Below, piece after piece: positions 11,551-48,118 of a DNA stretch of 64,000 bases (position 1 is its first letter; every line of letters starts with the position of its first letter). Both the position numbers and the translations under genes were made by a program. The DNA comes from Podarcis pityusensis. Taxonomy: Eukaryota. The stretch lies in the NCBI GenBank assembly GCA_964106645.2, contig OZ067043.1. One strand, written 5' to 3'. Below the pieces are notes generated by a model, which ran no database searches, had not been told where the DNA came from, and worked only from the letters and a program-made list of their open reading frames with translations.

Positions 11551-14500
11551 TTATTATTTATACCCCGCCCAGCTGGCTGGGCCTCCCCAGCCACTCTGGG
11601 CGGCTTCCATAGAAACCAAAAATACAGTAAAATATCACACGTTAAAAACTTCCCTGAACAGGGCTGCCTTAAGATGTCTTCTGAATGTCAGGTAGTTGTT
11701 TATCGCTTTGACATCTGCTGGAAGGGCGTTCCACAGGGCGGGCGCCACTACCGAGAAGGCCCTCTGCCTGGTTCCCTGTAGCTTTGCTTCTCACAATGAG
11801 GGAACCGCCAGAAGGCCCTCGGCGCTGGACCTCAGCGTCCGGGCAGAACGATGGGGGTGGAGACGCTCCTTCAGGTATACTGGCCCGAGGCCGTTTAGGG
11901 CTTTAAAGGTCAGCACCAACACTTTGAATTCTGCTCGGAAACGTACTGGGAGCCAATGTAGGTCTTTCAAGACCGGTGTTATATGGTCTCAGCAGCCACC
12001 CCCAGTCACCAGTCTAGCTGCCGCATTCTGGATTAGTTGTAGTTTCCGAGTCACCTTCAAAGGTAGCCCCACGTAGAGTGCATTGCAGTAGTCCAAGCGG
12101 GAGATAACCAGAGCATGCACCACTCTGGCGAGACAGTCCGCAGGCAGATAGGGTCTCAGCCTACGTACCAGATGGAGCTGGTAAACAGCTGCCCTGGACA
12201 CAGATTTGGCCTGTGACTCCATGGACAGCTGTGAGTCCAAAATGACTCCCAGGCTGCGCACCTGGTCCTTCAGGGGCACAGTTACCCCATTCAGGACCAG
12301 GGAATCCTCCACACCTGCCCGCCTCCTGTCCCCCAAAAACAGTACTTCTGTCTTGTCAGGATTCAACCTCAATCTGTTAGCTGCCATCCATCCTCCAACC
12401 GCCTCCAGACACTCACACAGGACCTTCACCGCCTTCACTGGTTCTGATTTAAAAGAGAGGTAGAGCTGGGTATCATCCGCATACTGATGAACACCCAGCC
12501 CAAACCTCCTGATGATCTCTCGCAGCGGCTGCATGTAAATGTTGAAAAGCATGGGGGCACCCCACAAGTGAGAGCCCAGGGGTCTGAACACTCATCCCCC
12601 ACCACCACTTTCTGAACATGGCCCAGGAGGAAAGAGCGGAACCACTGTATGACAGTGCCCCCAGCTCCCAGCCCCTCAAGACGGTCTAGAAGGATGTTAT
12701 GGTCGATTGTATCAAACGCCGCTGAGAGATCCAGCAGAACTAGGAAACAGCTCTCACCCTTGTCCCTAGCCCGCCGGAGATCATCAACCAGTGCGACTAA
12801 GGCAGTTTCAGTCCCATGATGAGGCTTGAATCCCAACTGGAAGGGATCCAAATGGTCTGCTTCTTCCAGGCGTGCCTGGAGTTGTTCAGCAACCGCTCGC
12901 TCAATCACCTTGCCCAAGAATGGAAGATTTGAGACTGGGTGATAGTTGGCCATCGTGGCCGCATCTAAAGATGGTTTTTTAAGAAGCAGTTTAATAACCG
13001 CCTCTTTCAGTGGGTCTGGGAAGGCTCCCTCACGGAGGGAAGCATTCACCACCCCACGAAGCCCATCGCCCAGTCCTTCCAGGCTAGCTTTTATAAGCCA
13101 GGATGGGCAAGGATCCAGGAGACAGGTGGTTGGTTTCACTCGTCCAAGCAGCCTGTCCACATCCTCGGAGGTAACAGATTGGAATTGATCCCACGCAACT
13201 TGACTAGACAAAACTCTAGCACTCTCCCGCCCCGGCCCTGCTCCCACGGTGGAGTCTACTTCTTCCCGAATCTGAGCGATTTTATCTGCAAAAAAATTTT
13301 GCAAAATCATTGCAGGAGAACATGTGGCCCATACTGGACTCCGATGTTGCAGGTGGTTCCGCTAAATTGTGAACCACCTGAAAAAGTCTTCTGCTGCTGT
13401 TTTCTGCAGATGCAATAGAGGCGGTGAAGAAATTCTTCTTCGCCGTCACTATCGCCACTTGGTAGGCTCGACATTGAGCTCTAACCTGTGTCCGGTCAGA
13501 TTCGGAATGAGTTATCCGCCACCGGTGCTCTAGCCATCTCAACGATTGTTTCATTGTCCTCAGATCCGTGGAAAACCACAGGGCTGTCCGCGCTCCATGC
13601 AATCGGAGAGGGCGCTTCGGAGCCAAACAGTCAATAGCCCTGGTTAACTCCACATTCCAGCGGGCCACCAGGGAATCAGCTGAAAGGCCATCAACATGGG
13701 ATAAAGCATCCCCTACCACTCTCTGGAAACCATTTGGATCCATTAAGTGGCGGGGGTGGACCATCCGAATTGGTCCCACCTCCCTGCAGAGGGGATGGGT
13801 CGCAGAGAAGTCCAGTTGCACCAGGAAGTGATCTGACCATGGCACTTCTTTCGTTTCGCTTTTACTTAGTGTCAGATCACCAACATCCATAGAGGTAAAC
13901 ACCAGGTCCAAGGCATGTCCGCGGCTATGGGTTGGGCCAGACTTATTCAGGGACAGCCCCATGGAGGCCATGCTTTCCACGAAGTCCTGAGCGGCCCCTT
14001 GTAAGGTCGTGTCGGCATGGATGTTAAAATCCCCTAGGACGACCAAGCTAGGTGTCTCCAGGAGAACATCCGCCATGACCTGAAGCAGCTCGGGCAGGGA
14101 ATCCTTGGTGCACCGGGGAGGTCGGTACACCAAAAGGAAACCTGTACTGCCCCTATTGCCCAACTTCCAGAACATGCACTCGGAAAACTGGGTCTTCCCA
14201 ATAGGACGCCTGGTGCAAACTAATGACTTCCTAAAAATCACTGCAACCCCCCCTCCCCGCCCACATGACCTGGGTTGCTGTGCGTAAGAGAAACCTGGTG
14301 GACAAGCAGCGGCAAGGACAGGCCCATCTGCTTCATCCAACCATGTCTCTGTTACACATGCCAGGTCAAGTCCTCCATCCATGATCAAGTCATGGATGGC
14401 AGTGGTCTTATGAATCATTGACCTGGCATTGCACAGCAGCACCTTCAGGTCATGTGGGTATCCCTTGCTGATTCTAGTATCCATCCGGTCAGGACCAGAC

Positions 14501-15133
14501 CCGGAGGCAGGAATAGTCCTCAGACAACGACTAAACCTGCCCTCTCTGTAATGACATGGTCTAGTCTTAGCGTAACTCCTCCTCCTACCCGTGATCACTG
14601 AGATCAGTTGTCCCAGTGCATCCCCCCCTGTGGAACATGCCCCAGCCATTTTGTGGGCTGGGGCCCACTCCCCGGCAGCCCTGACCCCTCCCCTTAAGAA
14701 CAAAATAACACCTTAAACAAACAAACAAACAAACAAACAAACAAACAAAACCAATAAAACAATACAAACAAAAAACTGTAACAATTACAAAAACATCAAA
14801 ATCAAAAAAATTCCCCAAGCCCAACCAAACATCCATCCCACCCCCACATACAAAAAATCCAAAAGAAAAATTTAAAAACATTTTAAAAACACTCTGTGCC
14901 CCTCCAGCAGTAACAGCAACTGTCCTAGTGAGGCCTGTCAGGCCCCGCCCTGGTCCAGGTGGTAAGTGGCAAGAGCAGGGCCCTCAGGCACTCACTCAGG
15001 GGAGTCCTCCCGGGCAGCAGGCAGCAAGCAGCAAGCAGTCCTTGTGAGGCTTCAGGCCCCCCCCCCAGGCCAGATGGTAAGTGGCAGGAAGGAGCAGGGC
15101 CCTCAGGCACTCACTCAGGGGGGTCCTCCCTGG
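11514..15133 (-). mobile_element. Near full-length L2 LINE: APE endonuclease + reverse transcriptase, inactivated
   Basis: ORF pieces 13282-14703 (NARS, ETW, YRPP, GDFN, LDL, SDH endonuclease motifs), 12435-13310 and 11989-12591 (LLDLSAAFDT, YADD, SRLDYCN), then HITPVL..LHWLP (L2 signature). (TTA)n tail at 11514-11550. Lesions: +1 in the A7 run at 13290-13296, deletion of QGS.LS near 12555, in-frame TGA at 11989-11991. Confidence 0.93.
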
Positions 15134-42406: not shown

Positions 42407-44010
42407 TACAAGAGGAAATTGAACTGAATCTTGCAGAGAAACATGCATAGTGACACTTGTTTTTGGTACATCTGTATGCATCTAATTCACTATCTCGACC
42501 ACTGCAAACCAAGTTTAAGGAACGTTTAAGGCGATAGTTGCAGGATCCATTTCTGTTGCTTGTCAGATCACTGGAAATCTATGATTTTGGAATTATTATT
42601 ATTATTATTATTATTATTTTACTAATATACATATTGAGAAAGAATGACACCTAAGTCAATAACCAGCACAAACCAATGCCACTTCAAAACTTACAGAATC
42701 CAGGTAGCTCAGATAACAAGATATTGCTTTTGCCCAGTGTGTTTACAACTTAGCTGGAACAAAGCTGCTTTTCCTGAAGCTATCCCTTTCAGGGCTGACT
42801 ATTCAAGTGCTGCTGAAAATCAGAGACTGGACTGGGAACCTGTGGCCCTCCTTGACCATTGGACATGCTGGCTGGGGCTAATAGGAGTTGAGCCCAACAA
42901 CATCTGGGTGACCACAGGTTCTCCATCCCTGCCGTAAATGAACTCTGTGCATCTTTTCATTGAGGCAATGCTTTTAAAATGATTGTGCAAACAATATTTA
43001 TTCTTTTTGTAGCATTCTATTTAACCAAGGGAAATTCATCATTAATGAGTACATTCAGAATGGTGTATGTTATCAAGATAGCCTCATACAACAAATACTG
43101 CAGTTCTTTTAAAGCAGCCAAATAGGAAAAGAAGTCATAACAGAGGACTATACAGAGTGAGAGCCTTTGTAAACATCCACCAAGCCTTGTGAATGCCGGA
43201 TGAAAGGTCTATCAACAAAACAGTTGTTCTATCTATCACCTAATCATCTCCTTAATATTACATCACTGTCACGTATTACAACTTCCCATCTTTTCAACAT
43301 CAACATGTTGTTTTTTTTGTAACAGGAACCATGTAAAACAGATAAGCTGCCCCCAATCCACTTTAATAAATACTTCAACATATGATCAGGGTAATTGAAA
43401 CCTTATTCTTCTATACTGCTGAACACAAGTGGCACATTGCTTGCAAAACCTTCCAAGTTGGTAGTCTGGTAACTTTGCTTTATCAAGAAGTGCCAGCTTC
43501 CCATTCTTTCAGTGCCTAATTAAATATGACCATGTTAATTTTCAATAGTGATTCTGAGTACAAAACCATAAAGATAGTTGTTTTGATTTAATTAACCCAG
43601 AATAAAGGATGTTATCTTAAGTCTGTGCCAGCAGTGCTCCATATTTAAAAGTACAGTGTTCCTGGTTTTTGTAGAATGCGCACATTTAGAGTTTGAGTGA
43701 ATTTTATATGTTGCATGCTGAAATACCATAACCATATTTGTGATAATACAACAAGCAATAACTGCACCCAAGGGCCATTTTTGGTAATTGTGTTGTTGTT
43801 TTCCTTGGACTTGGATCTACAAAGGGCCATTTTCCAAGTTTGTACAGAGAAGAAATATTCTGCTCTGTAAATTTCTGTGTTCTGTTGGGTTTTTCCACCC
43901 CTTTTCCTCTGCTTATTTATGTAAACAGGAACCTGGTTAGAACAATGTTTGAGAGAGCAGCATGCTTCTGCACTCTGCATTATAATTCATGCCCATAAAT
44001 CCATGCTGCA

Positions 44011-44016
44011 TTTATT
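44011..44016 (-). terminator. Candidate polyadenylation signal for the GPCR mRNA
   Basis: First AATAAA I found on the minus strand after the stop codon, about 400 nt downstream. Usage unverified. Confidence 0.3.
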
Positions 44017-44099
44017 CTATGAAATCCAGGAGGTTACAGTCCAACGCATCCAAGCAAACATCTGGCGCTTCAAGAGAAGTGCTCATTTCTAAAAGATAA

Positions 44100-44323
44100 C
44101 AGGACCAGCTCCATCATTAGGAAGAGTGAGGTGGCCACTTCAGGCAGCAGATTCTGTGGGACAGGGGGTGACAGTGACACGTTGGAGGCAGAGATATGTA
44201 GGCTGTGTGATCCATCCTACACTTCTTAAACGAGCCAATGTCCAATTGTCAATTCCATACATGGAAATAAAGGGGCCATCTTGTCCTTTACCTCAGGCAG
44301 CAAAATATCTCTGGCCAGCCCTG
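44100..44323 (+). mobile_element. hAT-like non-autonomous element in the presumptive GPCR 3' UTR
   Basis: caggaccagctcc...cctcaggcagcaaaatatctctggccagccctg; same family as 6617-6862. Confidence 0.6.
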
Positions 44324-44412
44324 CCCACAAAGGAGCTTGAAGTGGAATACGATAAGGACTGCACATACCAACACAACAGCCACCCTAAACAAAATGGCAG
44401 ACACCAACTGTG

Positions 44413-45495
44413 CTATCGGTTGCTCTCTGGGCGGAACATCTTCTTGAGGACTGCCACACAGGCAGGGGCAGAGCTGTGCTCCTCCTGTGAGCAGGCGGCA
44501 TCCTGAGAGGTCGATATCAGCACCGGCTTGTTGAACAGCTCCCGAACCCCCTGACGGAACTTGGGATCCCAAACACTGTAGATGGCCACGTTCCAACAGC
44601 TGTTGGAAGTGAGGATCCAGAAGGCGTAAAAGGAGAACTTGCACCACTGGTATCCCACTACTGACCCCACAACAAATACCGCAATGGGGAGGAAGGAAAC
44701 GGAGAAAGCAAAAGTCAGAATGCCAATGGTCTTGGCCGCGGTAATGTCTGAGAAGGAGACCTGGTTGCTACCGCCCTGTGCCTCTTCTCCCAGTTGCTTC
44801 CGTTTCTTGCAGTATTGGTGGACGGCTGCAAAGGTGACGGCATTGATCGCAAAGGTCCCGCTCAAAACTGAGAAGTCAAAGACCGGGTACAGTAGCATGA
44901 TATTCCAATGGGATTCGGGCGGCTTGTCTGTTGGAAAGGCATAGTTGCACATCTTGCTGCAGGCATTGTACTGGAAGGTGATATCAGGGCTGGAGAGCAA
45001 GGGCACCACTGCCAAGCAGCAGCTCATGACCCAAGAGGCCACAATGAGCCAAATAGTTCTGCGCTTGGTGATCACTGCTTTCCTGTGCAGAGGTTTCAGC
45101 ACAGCTACACTCCTCTCGACCGAGAGCAGAAAGATGGTGCTGATCGAGACAAAGGTGCAGCCTGCAAAGATGGGCCCAGTGATGAAGCAGGCAGGCTTCT
45201 CATATTTATCCATCTCTGGTTCCATCCCCCAGGTCAACCTATTCACCTCCCTGTAAACGGAGTAAGGCACAACGATGAGCCCCACCGCCAAGTCAGCTAG
45301 GGCCAAGGAGGCCTTCAGGTAGCCTTGGGAGGTTCTGAATTGCCTGACACGGAAGAAAACCAGGAGGCTCACCAGATTGCCGAGGCTGATGACCACCACC
45401 AGGAGGACCATGAGGAACAGCTTGAAGACGTCCCCAGCAGAGGCCTGGCTCCAGTCTGTGCAATTGGGGCTCCTGCCACTGCTGTTTCCCAACAT
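44413..45495 (-). CDS. Orphan class A (rhodopsin-like) GPCR, 360 aa, single coding exon
   Basis: True ATG and uninterrupted ORF with seven hydrophobic segments. GN (N1.50), LALADL (D2.50), C3.25 plus ECL2 Cys, ERS (R3.50), W4.50, FLP (P6.50), NSCWNVAIY (N7.49/Y7.53), helix 8 KFRQGV, N-glycosylation sequons NSS and NCT. Confidence 0.95.
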   Translation of the reverse strand: MLGNSSGRSPNCTDWSQASAGDVFKLFLMVLLVVVISLGNLVSLLVFFRVRQFRTSQGYLKASLALADLAVGLIVVPYSVYREVNRLTWGMEPEMDKYEKPACFITGPIFAGCTFVSISTIFLLSVERSVAVLKPLHRKAVITKRRTIWLIVASWVMSCCLAVVPLLSSPDITFQYNACSKMCNYAFPTDKPPESHWNIMLLYPVFDFSVLSGTFAINAVTFAAVHQYCKKRKQLGEEAQGGSNQVSFSDITAAKTIGILTFAFSVSFLPIAVFVVGSVVGYQWCKFSFYAFWILTSNSCWNVAIYSVWDPKFRQGVRELFNKPVLISTSQDAACSQEEHSSAPACVAVLKKMFRPESNR

Positions 45496-46099
45496 TGACC
45501 AGGTTGTATTTCCTTCCTAAGACAAGCAGGGAGCTACAAAAGTTACAGGCTAAGGTTTCTTCACCTCTGAAATTCCATGGGAGGTGCTTCACAGGGTGCT
45601 TTCTCCATACTGAATTTCCAGAAGTGGAGTTTGCAAGAAATAGCAGCAAAAACAATTTGAGTGGAAGTCCGGGTCAAACTGCAGCCTATTCACAAATGTA
45701 GAATCGACTGCTGTGCCCACAAAGATGTGAAGTGCAGATCAACACAGGAACAAGCTTGAAGTGCCAATCAGGCTCCCACACAATCTACTGTAATGAGTTC
45801 CTTCTCTCCCTCCCCCCCCCCTCTCTCTCACACACACAGGAGTCTAACTATAGTAGTGCATAGTTCACACAAGCAAAGGATTATTCAAAGATCATCTGCA
45901 AATACTGTGATCTTGCATCACTTTGTTCAAAACACACGCATTGATACTGCAATGTCGCACAAACCCTCAGATTTTTGCAGAAGCATCTCTCAGGCACACC
46001 TTGCGCGCGCGCGCACACACACAAATATAATAACAGACCCGTCACCTCTTATATGAGAGCCCTTGAAGTATTCAAGTGGTATTTGCCCTGGGATAATAC

Positions 46100-47270
46100 T
46101 ATGAGAGGTAGGTTGCAGATATCCGACAGACTATCGCTTGCTTCTCCCTCTCTTGAAGAGGAGAACTTTCCGTGCCTAGATCTACGAGAGTTACAGCAGC
46201 CTCCAGCGTAGTAAAAGCAAGAAAAGGGCAAGTCTTAACATTCCGCCATAGATTCACATGCTGGCAATTTCTCGCATCGGTGAGAAGTCTTTACGCGGAT
46301 AATCTGCACAGTCTCCTCCTCAAAACAAAGCAAAAGAACAAAGCAATCCTCGGGCCCTTTCCTGGAGTTGCCATTCAGATGCGCTCCGAAGTGGCTCCGT
46401 TCTTCTGGAAGGAACGTGCGCTCGAAAAAACCAGCACAAACTGGGAGACCCATCAGCCTGTAAGGCTCCCTGTTCGCCCTCTCAAGCTTTGCGGCGCTGC
46501 GCGCAGCTCCGGACTGTTTTCATCCTCCACCTCTCCCCGCATCGCTAGCCCGGCGGCCGCCTCAAAGTTCAACGCACCCTTGGCGAGAATCCCTGCGCCA
46601 ACTCCGCTGCGGTCCCGTCCTGCGGCAAAGAAGCGGCGCTCCGAGGGTTGCTCTTGAGACCGGCGACACCCTTCCCGCGACAAATAGCCTCTCTTCTGCA
46701 ACCCGAAAATGTGGTTACCCGAAAATCCATGCAACAGGTTCCTGGAGTTTCCAAAAAGAGGATGCTGCTGGAAACATTCGCCACGCGCCTCCAGATTGAA
46801 TATGTCCAGCCCTCTCTGCTCTCCAGTCCTTCGGCTGCTCAACCAAAACTAACCCAGTTTCCAGGTCTTCTTGCGTAGCTTCTTTTGGCGACGCCTCCCG
46901 CCTCCGGGGACTGGGTTACGGACGGCTCTTGCCCCATCGGGCGCTCCCTGCTTTTCTCACCTAAGAGAGCAAAAGGCGAGGGGGACTGCAGACTGGAGAC
47001 GCGCGAAACAATACTGCCGAGATTCTGGGCGAGATTATTTGCAGTGCTGGGGGCGTTGCTTAGATTTCCCCCGCACTCGCCGGCTCCAGTTTGGGCAGAG
47101 GGGGGTGTGCGAGGGGAATGGGTGTTGCTCCACACATCAGGGTCAGATTCTTCTGGGAGCGCGTGCGTGCGTGCGTGTGCTCCTAAGGGCGTGCTCCACA
47201 TTGGCTGGCGGAACGCAATGTTGCCACAGGGGCGTTATGGAGGGTTGTCGCTCTCATCCTAGATCGATCA
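46100..47270 (-). promoter_or_regulatory. CpG island: promoter and probable non-coding first exon of the GPCR
   Basis: Only long non-repeat CpG-dense stretch outside the CDS. AGCCAAT box on the minus strand (CCAAT at 47200-47204); E-box gtcacgtg 47547-47554 and GC box 47558-47564 upstream; candidate donor at 46046/46045 and acceptor at 45517/45516. Confidence 0.75.
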
Positions 47271-47279
47271 CCTGTTTCC

Positions 47280-47280
<1 letters not shown>

Positions 47281-47328
<48 letters not shown>
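47281..47328 (+). repeat. (ATT)n microsatellite next to the promoter
   Basis: Directly visible. Confidence 0.95.
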
Positions 47329-47329
<1 letters not shown>

Positions 47330-47575
47330 TTCCCCATAACAATTCGTTGGACAAAAGAAATCTCTCGAAGACCAGTCGAATGGGCGTTTTCCCTGCACCG
47401 CTTTTTAATACCGGACCAGTTCCATACATTCGCGAAATTTATTGCTAATGCTAAACCCCTTTTGTCATAAACATTGCTACGTCTCTCCCTTCCTTCCCAA
47501 ATTGCCCTTCAGAGAGAACTTAAGAGACGTTTCTCCATACACAGTGGTCACGTGGGGGGGGCGGAATAGAGGGGC

Positions 47576-47676
47576 AGAATCCTAGAATCCTAGAATCGGA
47601 AGAGACCCCAAGGGTCATCTACTCCAACCCCCTGCGATGCAGGAATCTCAGCTGAAACATCCATGGCAGATGGGCC
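47576..47676 (-). mobile_element. CR1 3' tail
   Basis: (agaatcct)n terminal repeat and ggtcatctactccaacccc...gcaggaatctcagct. Confidence 0.8.
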
Positions 47677-47939
47677 AAGGTGCACATGTGAGTGCCTGTT
47701 TGTCCCATCCTCAGATTTCTAAGGAAAATTGATGATGTGGTGGCACCCCTGTGTCCAGCCTTCTCTTGGGTGGAGTCCTTTCTTTGAAGGGGTGTCCTGC
47801 ATGTGTTGTCTTGGTCTGTTCTCATGTAGAAATTCACTGCAAGGTGAGTTGGTGGTTAACGGATTTTATCTCCAATGTGGCCTGGGTGCCTGCATTGAGT
47901 AGAATCCAACCTCTCCTGCCAGGCCACATCTTTAAGCAA

Positions 47940-48118
47940 AGGATCATAACTCAGTGGTAGAGCAGCTGCTTGACATACAGAAGGTCCCAGGTTGAATTGC
48001 CAGCATCTCCTGGTAGGAATGAGAGAACCCTCTGCCTGAAACACTGGGGAGCTGCTGGATAATCACAGCAGGTAATCCTGAGCTAGTGAGCCAGTGTAAG
48101 TCAGTTTCCAGTGTTCTC
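47940..48118 (+). mobile_element. tRNA-derived SINE (Anolis SINE2-like)
   Basis: ataactcagtggtagagca A box, ccaggttgaatt B box, gcctgaaac..tggggagctgct body. Confidence 0.65.

What the first reader, a model, noticed from the sequence alone, without database searches (positions are those of the whole stretch)
44413..45495. Intact orphan GPCR with an amine-receptor scaffold but a rewired ligand pocket
Seen, by counting from anchor residues: C3.25 to R3.50 places Phe at 3.32, and Y7.53 places Thr at 7.43 and Trp at 7.40. Established: aminergic receptors and classical TAARs bind the amine through D3.32, supported by Y7.43 and W7.40, so this is not a classical amine receptor even though it resembles one. 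TM5 (LLYPVFDFSV) has a buried Asp, near 5.47 on my alignment, which is uncertain because P5.50 is missing. TM2 ends in an R-E pair. Inference: it may bind a cationic or polar ligand through TM5, as in non-classical D5.42 amine recognition by fish TAARs, or be self-liganded by ECL2 as GPR52 is. I cannot match it to a named human gene, so it may belong to an uncharacterised receptor lineage missing from mammals. This is the best candidate for an undescribed signalling system in the window.
Basis: partly seen in the sequence, partly recalled or inferred. Interest (0 to 1): 0.8.

Follow-up and report, generated by a model that had tools for sequence, protein, structure and literature searches.

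The report
Unnamed orphan GPCR family, lizard member
This is an intact, selectively maintained lizard gene for a cell-surface receptor of an unnamed family found from sharks to reptiles but not seen in birds or mammals. It resembles amine receptors but lacks their amine-binding residue and carries a family-wide buried acidic residue in helix 5; its ligand is unknown.

Summary
Window 44413-45495 (-) is an intact single-exon ORF of 360 aa, a class A GPCR (Pfam 7tm_1, 1.5e-28). My own counts give F at 3.32, W at 7.40 and T at 7.43.

It is 1-3 residues different from Podarcis proteins, so the window is from a lacertid lizard. It belongs to a tight family with only inconsistent automatic database names. 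Members share at least 50% identity from sharks to lizards. There are three ancient subfamilies; the lizard gene is in A. No bird, mammal or true cyclostome member appeared. Family members score 340-580 bits against the family profile; the next full-length proteins score about 100.

Pairwise dN/dS is 0.11-0.26. Thin, strictly one-stranded RNA-seq cover fits the gene's strand.

The TM5 Asp (D207, most likely 5.47) is invariant in 36 sequences and lies at the centre of TM5's conserved face. None of 117 nearest non-family GPCRs has an acid there. ERS, N5.58, F6.48 and NVxxY are also fixed across the family. Canonical pocket positions are twice as conserved as the TM average.

It is not a classical amine, TAAR, TARL, adenosine or opsin receptor. 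The ligand and the role of the Asp remain inferred. The scan also flagged this same stretch once more (s1-734318).

The parts
44413..45495 (-). Single-exon coding sequence: 360 codons plus stop. It encodes a class A GPCR, subfamily A of an unnamed gnathostome orphan family.
   Evidence: ORF list; Pfam 7tm_1 1.5e-28; 1-3 residues different from Podarcis proteins; single-exon in Lacerta, Zootoca, Rhineura, Elgaria and Tiliqua; dN/dS 0.11-0.26.
45166..45168 (-). F110 at position 3.32, where amine receptors carry their ligand-binding Asp.
   Evidence: Own count from C103 (3.25) to R128 (3.50); F in 33 and Y in 3 of 36 family members.
45109..45117 (-). E127-R128-S129: ERS in place of D/ERY at 3.49-3.51.
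   Evidence: E and R are invariant; S in 31 of 36. Among 117 nearest non-family GPCRs, 3.51 is Y or F in 98 and never S.
45247..45249 (-). E83 (2.65), an invariant acidic residue at the extracellular end of TM2.
   Evidence: Invariant in 36 of 36; the neighbouring R82 is variable.
44935..44982 (-). Core of extracellular loop 2 (residues 172-187). It is a predicted beta hairpin holding two invariant cysteines, C179 and C183, and near-invariant Y176, S180, M182 and Y185.
   Evidence: DSSP strands 173-177 and 182-186, block pLDDT 85-87; conservation.
44791..44913 (-). Transmembrane helix 5 (residues 195-235). It lacks P5.50 (V210) and has an invariant stripe P204, D207, L211, T214, N218.
   Evidence: Helix limits from the model; invariance; conservation moment.
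44875..44877 (-). D207, the buried TM5 Asp. It is most likely 5.47 (5.48 or 5.53 in other alignments).
   Evidence: Invariant in 36 of 36. It lies 2 degrees from the centre of TM5's conserved face. None of 117 nearest non-family GPCRs has D or E at the aligned columns 206-208. The only difference seen in reads here is synonymous (44875 G>A on the + strand).
44842..44844 (-). N218, at the position of the activation-switch residue Y5.58.
   Evidence: Invariant in 36 of 36; aligned with Y5.58 of TAAR9 and of the Ptychodera receptor.
44608..44619 (-). W293-I-L-T296, covering positions 7.40 to 7.43.
   Evidence: W293 is invariant; T in 30 and A in 6 of 36 at 7.43.
44578..44592 (-). N302-V-A-I-Y306: NVxxY in place of NPxxY.
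   Evidence: N is invariant; V in 35 of 36; Y in 35 of 36.
44425..44460 (-). Conserved motif at the extreme C-terminus (residues 346-357, CVAVLKKMFRPE). It is specific to subfamily A.
   Evidence: Alignment A1: recognisable from sharks to lizards and absent in subfamilies B and C. The model has low confidence here.
42990..44412 (-). Probable 3' untranslated region.
   Evidence: 77-82% identical to Rhineura downstream of the stop codon. One-stranded RNA-seq cover reaches down to about 43585, and a 1905-nt contig from run X1 spans 43893-45793.
45496..46933 (-). Probable 5' untranslated region and promoter, at the edge of a GC-richer block.
   Evidence: Alignable with Rhineura up to 46878. One-stranded RNA-seq cover at 46146-46933, no splice joint seen at this depth. 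GC content is 0.51-0.52 at 44-48 kb.

Best explanation
The ORF is the working lizard copy of subfamily A of an unnamed orphan family of rhodopsin-like (class A) receptors. The family arose by the base of jawed vertebrates and split early into three paralogues. In amniotes, only subfamily A was found, and only in non-avian reptiles.

Shown: the gene is intact, under purifying selection, and transcribed at a low level from its own strand. The family is sharply set apart from every other GPCR. It has a fixed, unusual residue set: F3.32, an invariant Asp on the inward face of TM5, E2.65, ERS, N5.58, F6.48 and NVxxY. D2.50, S3.39, N7.45, S7.46, R3.50, D6.30 and Y7.53 are kept. Its canonical ligand-pocket positions are almost frozen across all three paralogues.

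Inferred mechanism: the receptor is gated by a conserved endogenous small ligand, not by odorants. The ligand would enter a largely aromatic pocket, and its polar or cationic group would pair with the TM5 Asp deep between TM5 and TM6, at the level of the 6.48 switch. That would be a counter-ion moved from TM3 to TM5. Movement of TM5/TM6 would then be passed to a G protein through a rewired switch network (N5.58 and NVxxY instead of Y5.58 and NPxxY), with the R3.50-D6.30 lock retained.

The identity part is near certain (about 0.95). The ligand-through-Asp part is a hypothesis. The stated confidence is for the whole statement.
For: Identity and family:
- Pfam 7tm_1.
- Orthologues at 50-88% identity in squamates, turtles, crocodilians, amphibians, lungfish, ray-finned fishes and sharks, with contradictory automatic names and no gene symbol in any source.
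- A score cliff in a full HMMER scan of 1.84 billion representatives: full-length members score 340-580 bits, and the next full-length proteins about 100-108 bits.
- The tree shows a monophyletic family (SH-aLRT 96) with three subfamilies. B and C each clearly hold both cartilaginous and bony fishes; the shark A-type clade sits in an unresolved fork.

Function retained:
- dN/dS is 0.11-0.26 in 15 pairwise comparisons.
- The coding sequence is better conserved than its flanks.
- Two stranded RNA-seq runs of a congener cover 43585-45751 and 46146-46933 almost only on the sense orientation.

Pocket and Asp:
- D207, E83, F268, N218, N302, E127, R128, C103, C179, C183 and C285 are invariant.
- Mean entropy of 30 canonical pocket positions is 0.51 bits against 1.02 for all 225 TM positions (permutation p = 0.00065), and D207 is 2 degrees off the centre of TM5's conserved face.
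- None of 117 nearest non-family GPCRs has an acidic residue at the aligned columns.
- Low copy number and near one-to-one orthology argue against a chemosensory role.
- Precedent for a TM5 Asp replacing D3.32 as amine counter-ion: fish clade III TAARs, at 5.42 (PMC4695389).

From established knowledge: position 5.47 lines the deep end of the orthosteric pocket in rhodopsin and aminergic receptors. An Asp inside an aromatic cage is the usual way class A receptors hold amines.
Against: - No coordinates of the AlphaFold model could be read, so whether the D207 side chain points into a cavity, to TM3/TM6 or to water or an ion is not shown.
- The helix register is not fully fixed (5.47, 5.48 or 5.53 in different alignments).
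- The Asp lies deeper than any known amine counter-ion (3.32, 5.42), at the level of the connector region, where a purely structural or allosteric role is as natural.
- The pocket is so hydrophobic, and P5.50 is missing as in lipid receptors (CB1 is among the better profile matches), that a lipid-like ligand is possible.
- The strong conservation of ECL2 and ECL3 also fits a built-in lid or agonist.
- Expression evidence is thin: depth 1-2.5 with about 12% of each run read, tissue unknown, from a sister species.
- Absence from birds and mammals rests on protein databases, not on genome searches.
Confidence: 0.4

Rival explanations
1. The receptor is self-activated or constitutively active. The covalently tethered ECL2 hairpin, possibly with ECL3, fills or caps the pocket as a built-in agonist, as in GPR52 and GPR21. 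The TM5 Asp is then part of the internal polar network that replaces P5.50 and Y5.58, not a ligand contact.
For: - The ECL2 core and ECL3 are unusually conserved (mean entropy 0.97 and 0.98 bits, against 3.0 for ECL1).
- There are four invariant extracellular cysteines, enough to tie ECL2 both to TM3 and to the top of TM7.
- GPR21, GPR161 and GPR52 are among the top structural matches (Z 27.3, 26.4, 26.1), but they are tied with many others.
- Self-activation through ECL2 is established for GPR52 and GPR21 (PMC9839698, PMC10085714; titles and abstracts listed).
- Three canonical switches are altered family-wide.
Against: - Sequence similarity to GPR21 is weak (E 4.6e-10, no better than to dozens of receptors), and GPR21/52 are not among the best 60 profile matches.
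- The retained R3.50-D6.30 pair and the Na+-site residues D2.50, S3.39, N7.45 and S7.46 are what one expects of a receptor held inactive until a ligand arrives.
- The position of ECL2 relative to the pocket could not be inspected.
Confidence: 0.25
2. The receptor binds a hydrophobic or lipid-like endogenous ligand. The pocket holds an apolar ligand, and the TM5 Asp either hydrogen-bonds a single polar group or only shapes the helix.
For: - The canonical pocket positions are almost all aromatic or aliphatic: F3.32, A3.33, L5.42, F5.43, F5.46, F6.48, I6.51, A6.52, V6.55, F7.39, W7.40 and L7.42.
- P5.50 is missing, as in cannabinoid, lysophospholipid and melanocortin receptors (established knowledge).
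- CB1 scores about 61 bits with the family profile, close to the amine receptors.
- The protein-language search put prostanoid and LPA receptor clusters among the nearest.
Against: - An invariant unpaired carboxylate deep in an apolar pocket is costly unless it meets a charge or a strong donor.
- No basic residue that could hold a lipid head group is conserved at the pocket mouth; instead E2.65 is invariant there.
- Similarity to lipid receptors is no higher than to amine receptors.
Confidence: 0.2
3. It is what the databases call it: a beta-adrenergic, adenosine, histamine H2 or trace-amine receptor-like gene, that is, a classical amine or purine receptor or a TAAR/TARL family member.
For: Automatic names in NCBI and UniRef. 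The best solved relatives are TAAR9, beta1/2/3AR and A2A.
Against: - D3.32 is F. Positions 5.42, 5.43 and 5.46 are L, F/Y and F. N6.55 of adenosine receptors is V, and 7.43 is T.
- The TAAR fingerprint in TM7/helix 8 is not met.
- Scores to all these receptors are only 55-75 bits, against at least 340 within the family.
- The names contradict each other from species to species.
- Zebrafish TARL1 (PMC8032801) has a different sequence, and its PCR primers do not match the Danio aesculapii locus of this family.
Confidence: 0.03
4. It is a decaying or functionless copy, for example a retrocopy drifting neutrally, whose odd motifs are damage.
For: The gene is intronless and isolated: no called gene lies within 10 kb in three related genomes. 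Canonical motifs are altered. RNA cover is thin.
Against: - The ORF is intact in every species examined.
- dN/dS is 0.11-0.26.
- The 'odd' residues are invariant from sharks to lizards, so they are ancestral features, not recent damage.
- All family members looked at are single-exon.
- The 3' UTR is conserved to Rhineura.
Confidence: 0.02

Closest known systems
Classical biogenic-amine receptors (beta-adrenergic, histamine H2, dopamine, muscarinic)
   Same: They are the best-scoring solved structures with the family profile (beta2AR 75 bits, beta1AR 75 bits). Shared scaffold features are P2.59, C3.25 to ECL2 Cys, I3.40, F6.44, D/E6.30, an AAKT-type motif at the base of TM6, W7.40, N7.45-S7.46 and a PL motif in ICL2.
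   Different: There is no D3.32 (F), no polar 5.42/5.43/5.46, F instead of W6.48, I-A instead of F-F at 6.51-6.52, and T instead of Y7.43. ERS, N5.58 and NVxxY replace the usual switches, and P5.50 is absent. Identity is at most 25%.
Fish clade III TAARs with non-classical amine recognition through Asp5.42 (PMC4695389)
   Same: D3.32 is lost and an Asp is present in TM5. TAAR9 and TAAR13c/d/e are among the best sequence matches. The genes are single-exon.
   Different: The Asp is about five residues deeper (5.47, not 5.42). The TAAR fingerprint is absent. There is no gene expansion: copies are one to a few per genome and evolve slowly. Scores to TAARs are only about 55-63 bits.
TARL (taar-like) genes of jawed vertebrates (PMC8032801)
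   Same: The evolutionary style is the same: mono-exonic, slowly evolving, an early duplication in jawed vertebrates, and most teleosts keeping only one copy.
   Different: It is a different gene family. The printed Dr-tarl1 sequence differs in TM1-TM2, and its primers do not match the Danio aesculapii locus L006 of this family. The helix-8 positions are D and K here, against N and S in TARL.
Self-activating orphans GPR52 and GPR21
   Same: They are of similar size, and their ECL2 plays a functional role. They are among the top structural matches (Z 27.3 and 26.1).
   Different: The Z values are tied with about 50 unrelated class A receptors. Sequence similarity is weak (E 4.6e-10). A role of ECL2 as agonist was not tested here.
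Lipid receptors lacking P5.50 (CB1, LPA, S1P)
   Same: They lack P5.50 and have a hydrophobic pocket. CB1 scores about 61 bits with the family profile.
   Different: This family keeps the C3.25 to ECL2 disulfide cysteines, which CB1 lacks (established knowledge), has a buried TM5 Asp, and lacks NPxxY.

Membership tests
Rhodopsin-like (class A) GPCRs | Match to Pfam 7tm_1 above the gathering score, and a seven-helix fold | tested here: met
   100.4 bits against a cut-off of 30.5, E 1.5e-28. The AlphaFold model has 7 TM helices plus helix 8, pLDDT 79.5, pTM 0.77. Z is 24-27 to many class A structures.
Rhodopsin-like (class A) GPCRs | Reference residues N1.50, D2.50, R3.50, W4.50, P6.50, N7.49 and Y7.53, and the C3.25 to ECL2 cysteine pair | tested here: met
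   N40, D68, R128, W155, P270, N302, Y306, C103 and C183 are invariant or nearly so. P5.50 and P7.50 are missing (V210, V303).
Classical biogenic-amine receptors | Asp at 3.32 as counter-ion for the ligand amine | tested here: not met
   F110. The family has F in 33 and Y in 3 of 36.
Classical biogenic-amine receptors | Aromatic cluster W6.48 and F6.51/F6.52, with Y7.43 supporting D3.32 | tested here: not met
   F268, I271, A272 and T296. Only W7.40 is kept.
Trace amine-associated receptors (TAAR) | TAAR fingerprint NSxxNPxx[YH]xxx[YF]xWF in TM7/helix 8 (as described in PMC8032801) | tested here: not met
   The sequence is NSCWNVAIYSVWDPKF. P is replaced by V, the [YF] position is D, and the W position is K.
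Trace amine-associated receptors (TAAR) | Asp3.32 and/or Asp5.42 (5.43) for amine contact (PMC4695389) | tested here: not met
   3.32 is F, 5.42 is L202 and 5.43 is Y203 (F in most members). The TM5 Asp is at 5.47.
TARL (taar-like) genes | Sequence identity with described tarl genes (zebrafish tarl1) | tested here: not met
   Two Dr_tarl1 primers give 0 matches at up to 3 mismatches in the Danio aesculapii locus of this family. The printed Dr-tarl1 TM1-TM2 sequence differs.
Adenosine receptors | N6.55 hydrogen-bonding the adenine, with H7.43/S7.42 for the ribose (established knowledge) | tested here: not met
   V275 at 6.55 is invariant, with L295 at 7.42 and T296 at 7.43. A2A scores only 68 bits with the family profile.
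Opsins | Lys at 7.43 for the retinal Schiff base | tested here: not met
   T296 (T30, A6 of 36), although some members are auto-named 'rhodopsin, GQ-coupled-like'.
GPR52/GPR21-type self-activating orphans | ECL2 folded into the orthosteric pocket as a built-in agonist, with high basal activity | not testable with these tools
   Model coordinates are not readable and there is no functional assay. Only ECL2 conservation and a hairpin prediction are available.
Unnamed gnathostome orphan family (this report), subfamily A | Family signature: F/Y3.32, ERS, CSxMCNY in ECL2, PxFD in TM5, N5.58, F6.48, WC before TM7, NSCWNV in TM7. For subfamily A, also the C-terminal CVAVLK-type motif | tested here: met
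   All are present in the window protein. It groups with Podarcis, Rhineura and other squamates inside subfamily A.

The most novel reading that the evidence does not exclude
The three paralogues (A, B, C) are the receptors of an undescribed vertebrate signalling system. It would use a conserved endogenous, probably cationic, small ligand read by a counter-ion relocated to deep TM5, with a rewired activation switch. The system would be kept in fishes, amphibians and non-avian reptiles and lost independently in birds and in mammals.
Probability: 0.3. Interest if true: 0.75.

Novelty: new variant of a known kind. Interest (0 to 1): 0.55.

Why it matters
Nearly all orphan-receptor work is centred on human genes, so a receptor family that mammals lack is invisible to it. 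This family is ancient, present in few copies and strongly constrained, and it occurs in standard model species (Xenopus, medaka, stickleback, gar, Anolis, the genus Danio).

Its ligand pocket is almost unchanged across about 450 million years. It has a unique invariant buried Asp, and three canonical activation switches are replaced. It is therefore both a candidate for an unknown endogenous ligand and a natural experiment on how class A receptors can activate without P5.50, Y5.58 and P7.50.

The apparent absence from birds and mammals, if confirmed on genomes, poses a clear evolutionary question. It is also a practical warning for annotation: these proteins currently carry more than a dozen misleading names, some without even a '-like' suffix.

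Tried and rejected
1. **A gene symbol or paper for the family.** Three cluster look-ups gave only automatic names. Full-text searches by phrases, auto-names and six RefSeq accessions found nothing relevant. The 2026 IUPHAR orphan review does not cover it.
2. **TARL identity.** Rejected.
3. **Invertebrate orthologues.** The nearest amphioxus and hemichordate proteins score about 100 bits to the family. They score just as well to beta1AR and TAAR13e and lack the family hallmarks. They are generic amine-like receptors, not orthologues.
4. **A cyclostome member.** The 'Lampetra planeri' hit is 89.6% identical to a percomorph protein, so it is contamination.
5. **Structure searches.** Foldseek and VIA-align give the generic class A fold with tied scores and no specific relative. 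The Atlas feature search was uninformative.
6. **Side-chain environment of D207 and the position of ECL2.** Not possible, because model coordinates are not exposed.
7. **Synteny.** No called gene lies within 10 kb in three related genomes. The only other large ORFs in the window are a broken LINE.
8. **Labelled phylogeny with human aminergic, adenosine, GPR21/52, GPR161 and GPR101 sequences.** Not done, because no referenced sequences of those were available. Profile-to-PDB scores were used as a proxy.
9. **Bacterial promoter/terminator scan.** Irrelevant to a vertebrate gene; ignored.
10. **hmmalign of outgroups.** It mis-registers TM5 in part of the rows, so only the 'no acidic residue at 206-208' count is used.
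Full report
**What is there.** Window 44413..45495 on the minus strand is an uninterrupted ORF of 360 codons with an ATG start (DNA read). Pfam 7tm_1 matches residues 39-306 at 1.5e-28. An AlphaFold2 model built on a 36-sequence family alignment has seven helices plus helix 8, a beta-hairpin ECL2 (strands 173-177 and 182-186), mean pLDDT 79.5 and pTM 0.77.

- Counting from C103 (3.25) to R128 (3.50) puts F110 at 3.32.
- Counting back from Y306 (7.53) puts T296 at 7.43 and W293 at 7.40.

**Position of the TM5 Asp.** D207 aligns to 5.47 in the phmmer alignment with TAAR9 and in a MAFFT alignment with the nearest invertebrate receptors. It aligns to 5.48 in the profile alignment with beta2AR. In 23 of 117 outgroup rows, hmmalign put P5.50 on the family's P204, which would give 5.53. 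The predicted helix limits of 195-235 and the hydrophobic centre near residue 212 favour V210 = 5.50, so D207 = 5.47 and N218 = 5.58.

**Whose gene it is.** The protein differs at 1-3 residues from the Podarcis muralis, P. raffonei and P. lilfordi proteins, and at 9 residues from those of Lacerta agilis and Zootoca. The window therefore comes from a Podarcis-like lacertid lizard.

- The word-based search found orthologues at 87% (Rhineura), 65-76% (other squamates), 69-74% (turtles, crocodilians), 60-66% (amphibians) and 51-58% (lungfish, gar, bowfin, sturgeon, some teleosts, sharks).
- Their database names contradict one another: adenosine A1/A2a/A3-like, beta-1/2/3-adrenergic-like, TAAR-like, histamine H2-like, ghrelin-receptor-like, 'rhodopsin GQ-coupled-like', 'OPSD1', LPA receptor 3, olfactory receptor 4D9.
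- No source gives a gene symbol, not even in Xenopus, medaka, stickleback or the genus Danio.
- Full-text searches by such names and by six accessions found no paper on the family.

**A discrete family.** A profile of the alignment was run with HMMER against 1.84 billion representative proteins. Full-length members score 340-580 bits and fragments score 100-300 bits. The best non-members score only 108-99 bits: an unnamed Logan protein, an amphioxus 'A1-like/GPR52-like' protein and a Ptychodera 'H2-like' protein.

- These invertebrate proteins score equally well against beta1AR or TAAR13e and lack the family hallmarks, so they are not specific relatives.
- Against solved structures, the family profile scores at most 75 bits (beta2AR, beta1AR), 68 (A2A), 63 (TAAR13c) and 61 (CB1).
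- Foldseek and VIA-align return only the generic class A fold, with tied scores.

**Family structure.** A maximum-likelihood tree of 74 rows gives a monophyletic family (SH-aLRT 96) with three subfamilies.

- Subfamily A has a long C-tail. It holds non-avian reptiles, amphibians, lungfish, non-teleost ray-fins and a few teleosts. A shark clade with the same C-tail type sits in an unresolved fork at the family base.
- Subfamily B holds chimaera and shark, coelacanth, lungfish, amphibians, and most teleosts including cyprinids.
- Subfamily C holds sharks and chimaera, coelacanth, bichir, gar and bowfin.
- B and C each clearly hold both cartilaginous and bony fishes, so the splits predate the radiation of jawed vertebrates.
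- Anolis sagrei and Hemicordylus carry extra, lineage-specific 328-aa copies.

**Taxonomic gaps.** No bird or mammal appears among the best 120 hits of either search, although their orthologues would be expected to rank with or above amphibians and fishes. None of the 117 nearest non-members carries the family's TM5 Asp, so no divergent hidden member was seen. The one 'lamprey' hit is 89.6% identical to a percomorph protein and is contamination. Absence rests on annotated proteins only; genomes could not be searched.

**Is it working?** The gene is single-exon and intact in Lacerta, Zootoca, Rhineura, Elgaria and Tiliqua.

- Nei-Gojobori dN/dS is 0.11-0.16 among lacertids and Rhineura, and 0.22-0.26 to Elgaria and Tiliqua.
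- The flanks are about 90% identical between lacertids, while the coding sequence has dS 0.07-0.10 and dN 0.011-0.013. About 1.4 kb downstream and 1.4 kb upstream remain alignable with Rhineura.
- In two stranded bulk RNA-seq runs of a congener, with about 12% of each run read, cover of depth 1-2.5 lies over 43585-45751 and 46146-46933. It is almost entirely on one orientation (first mate on +), which in the usual libraries means RNA from the minus strand, the gene's strand. No splice joint was seen.
- A small run of another relative holds a 1905-nt contig spanning 43893-45793. Whether that run is RNA is only guessed by the tool.
- The gene is thus under purifying selection and transcribed at a low level in unknown tissue.

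**The residue pattern.** Across 36 sequences spanning all three subfamilies:

- Invariant: N1.50, D2.50, P2.59, S2.61, E2.65, C3.25, G3.29, S3.39, T3.42, E3.49, R3.50, W4.50, P4.60, C179, C183, L5.41, P204, D207, L5.51, T5.54, N218 (5.58), F6.48, V6.55, G6.57, W284, C285, F7.39, W7.40, L7.42, S7.46, C7.47 and N7.49.
- Nearly invariant: F3.32 (33 F, 3 Y), A3.33, T3.36, I3.40, D6.30, F6.44, P6.50, A6.52, N7.45, V7.50 and Y7.53.
- The family therefore keeps the Na+-pocket residues, the R3.50-D6.30 pair and Y7.53. It has ERS for DRY, no P5.50, N for Y5.58, F for W6.48 and NVxxY for NPxxY.
- Because these changes are fixed from sharks to lizards, they are ancestral design, not decay. This agrees with the scan's other note on the same stretch (s1-734318).

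**The pocket and the Asp.** Thirty canonical orthosteric-pocket positions have a mean entropy of 0.51 bits, against 1.02 for all 225 TM positions (permutation p = 0.00065). The ECL2 core and ECL3 are at 0.97-0.98, against 3.0 for ECL1.

- In TM5 the invariant residues P204, D207, L211, T214 and N218 form one helical stripe. D207 lies 2 degrees from the centre of the conserved face. It therefore faces the helix bundle, on the same face as the 5.58 position. This is an inference from periodicity, not from coordinates.
- From established structures, 5.47 lines the deep end of the orthosteric pocket next to 6.48 and 6.52.
- The surrounding pocket positions are aromatic or aliphatic.
- No conserved basic residue in the TM core could neutralise the Asp.

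**Most likely mechanism and its rivals.**

- Best reading (0.4 as a whole): the family consists of receptors for a conserved endogenous small ligand. Its cationic or strongly polar group pairs with the TM5 Asp inside an aromatic cage, so the counter-ion has moved from TM3 to deep TM5. Signalling to G proteins would run through a rewired switch network. The precedent for moving the amine counter-ion to TM5 is the fish clade III TAARs, which use Asp5.42 (PMC4695389). Here the Asp is one and a half turns deeper, and the family is not chemosensory in style (few copies, slow evolution).
- Rival 1 (0.25): a self-activated receptor whose doubly tethered ECL2 acts as lid or agonist, as in GPR52 and GPR21 (PMC9839698, PMC10085714), with the Asp structural.
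- Rival 2 (0.2): a lipid-like ligand in a hydrophobic pocket lacking P5.50.
- Effectively excluded: membership of the classical amine, TAAR, TARL, adenosine or opsin families, because a defining feature failed in each case. Zebrafish tarl1 primers do not match the Danio locus of this family and the printed sequence differs. Neutral decay is excluded as well.

**Verdict.** This is an intact orphan class A receptor with an amine-receptor-like scaffold and a rewired pocket, belonging to an unnamed lineage not seen in mammals or in birds. As far as the searchable literature shows, the definition of the family is new: three ancient paralogues, a fixed signature and an invariant deep TM5 Asp. The ligand, the coupling and the role of the Asp are unproven. 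I rate it a new variant of a known kind, with interest 0.55.

Noticed in passing
window 11989-14703 (-): Three overlapping broken ORFs carry an endonuclease domain (Exo_endo_phos) and reverse-transcriptase domains (RVT_1). This is a degraded LINE retrotransposon in a GC-richer block.
   Followed up: partly
window about 42797-42993 and 47525-47721: Interspersed repeats. They are very deep in all sequencing runs (up to 1116x summed contig depth in X1), reads continue into unlike sequence, and the RNA reads here lie mostly in the orientation opposite to that over the gene.
   Followed up: no
window 44425-44460 (-), residues 346-357: A motif at the extreme C-terminus (CVAVLKKMFRPE) is conserved in subfamily A from sharks to lizards and absent in subfamilies B and C. 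It lies in a low-confidence, probably disordered tail. It may be a trafficking or partner-binding motif.
   Followed up: no
proteins P0041 (Hemicordylus) and P0042 (Anolis sagrei): Squamates carry lineage-specific extra copies of 328 aa that lack the C-tail but keep the TM5 Asp and the other hallmarks. Each groups with its own lineage in the tree. Whether the window's species has one is unknown.
   Followed up: partly
proteins P0318 and P0402, 'Lampetra planeri', on a 38-kb contig: This supposed lamprey member is 89.6% identical to a percomorph subfamily-B protein (P0320). It is most likely teleost contamination of that assembly.
   Followed up: partly
family alignment A1; window residues C103, C179, C183, C285: There are four invariant extracellular cysteines. 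Subfamily A typically has one more in the N-terminus, and B and C have four more. Two disulfides are possible in every member, one of which would tie ECL2 to the top of TM7. This is an inference only.
   Followed up: partly
window 46000-48000: A GC-richer block (0.52) lies upstream of the gene. It is partly alignable with Rhineura up to 46878 and carries sense-strand RNA cover at 46146-46933. It is probably the promoter and 5' UTR. The long ORFs there have no Pfam match.
   Followed up: partly
residue 309 (7.56), window 44569-44571 (-): Squamates, turtles and crocodilians have W at this position in the SVWDPKF stretch, where all other members have R (SVRDxKF). This is a reptile-specific change at the TM7/helix 8 junction.
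   Followed up: no
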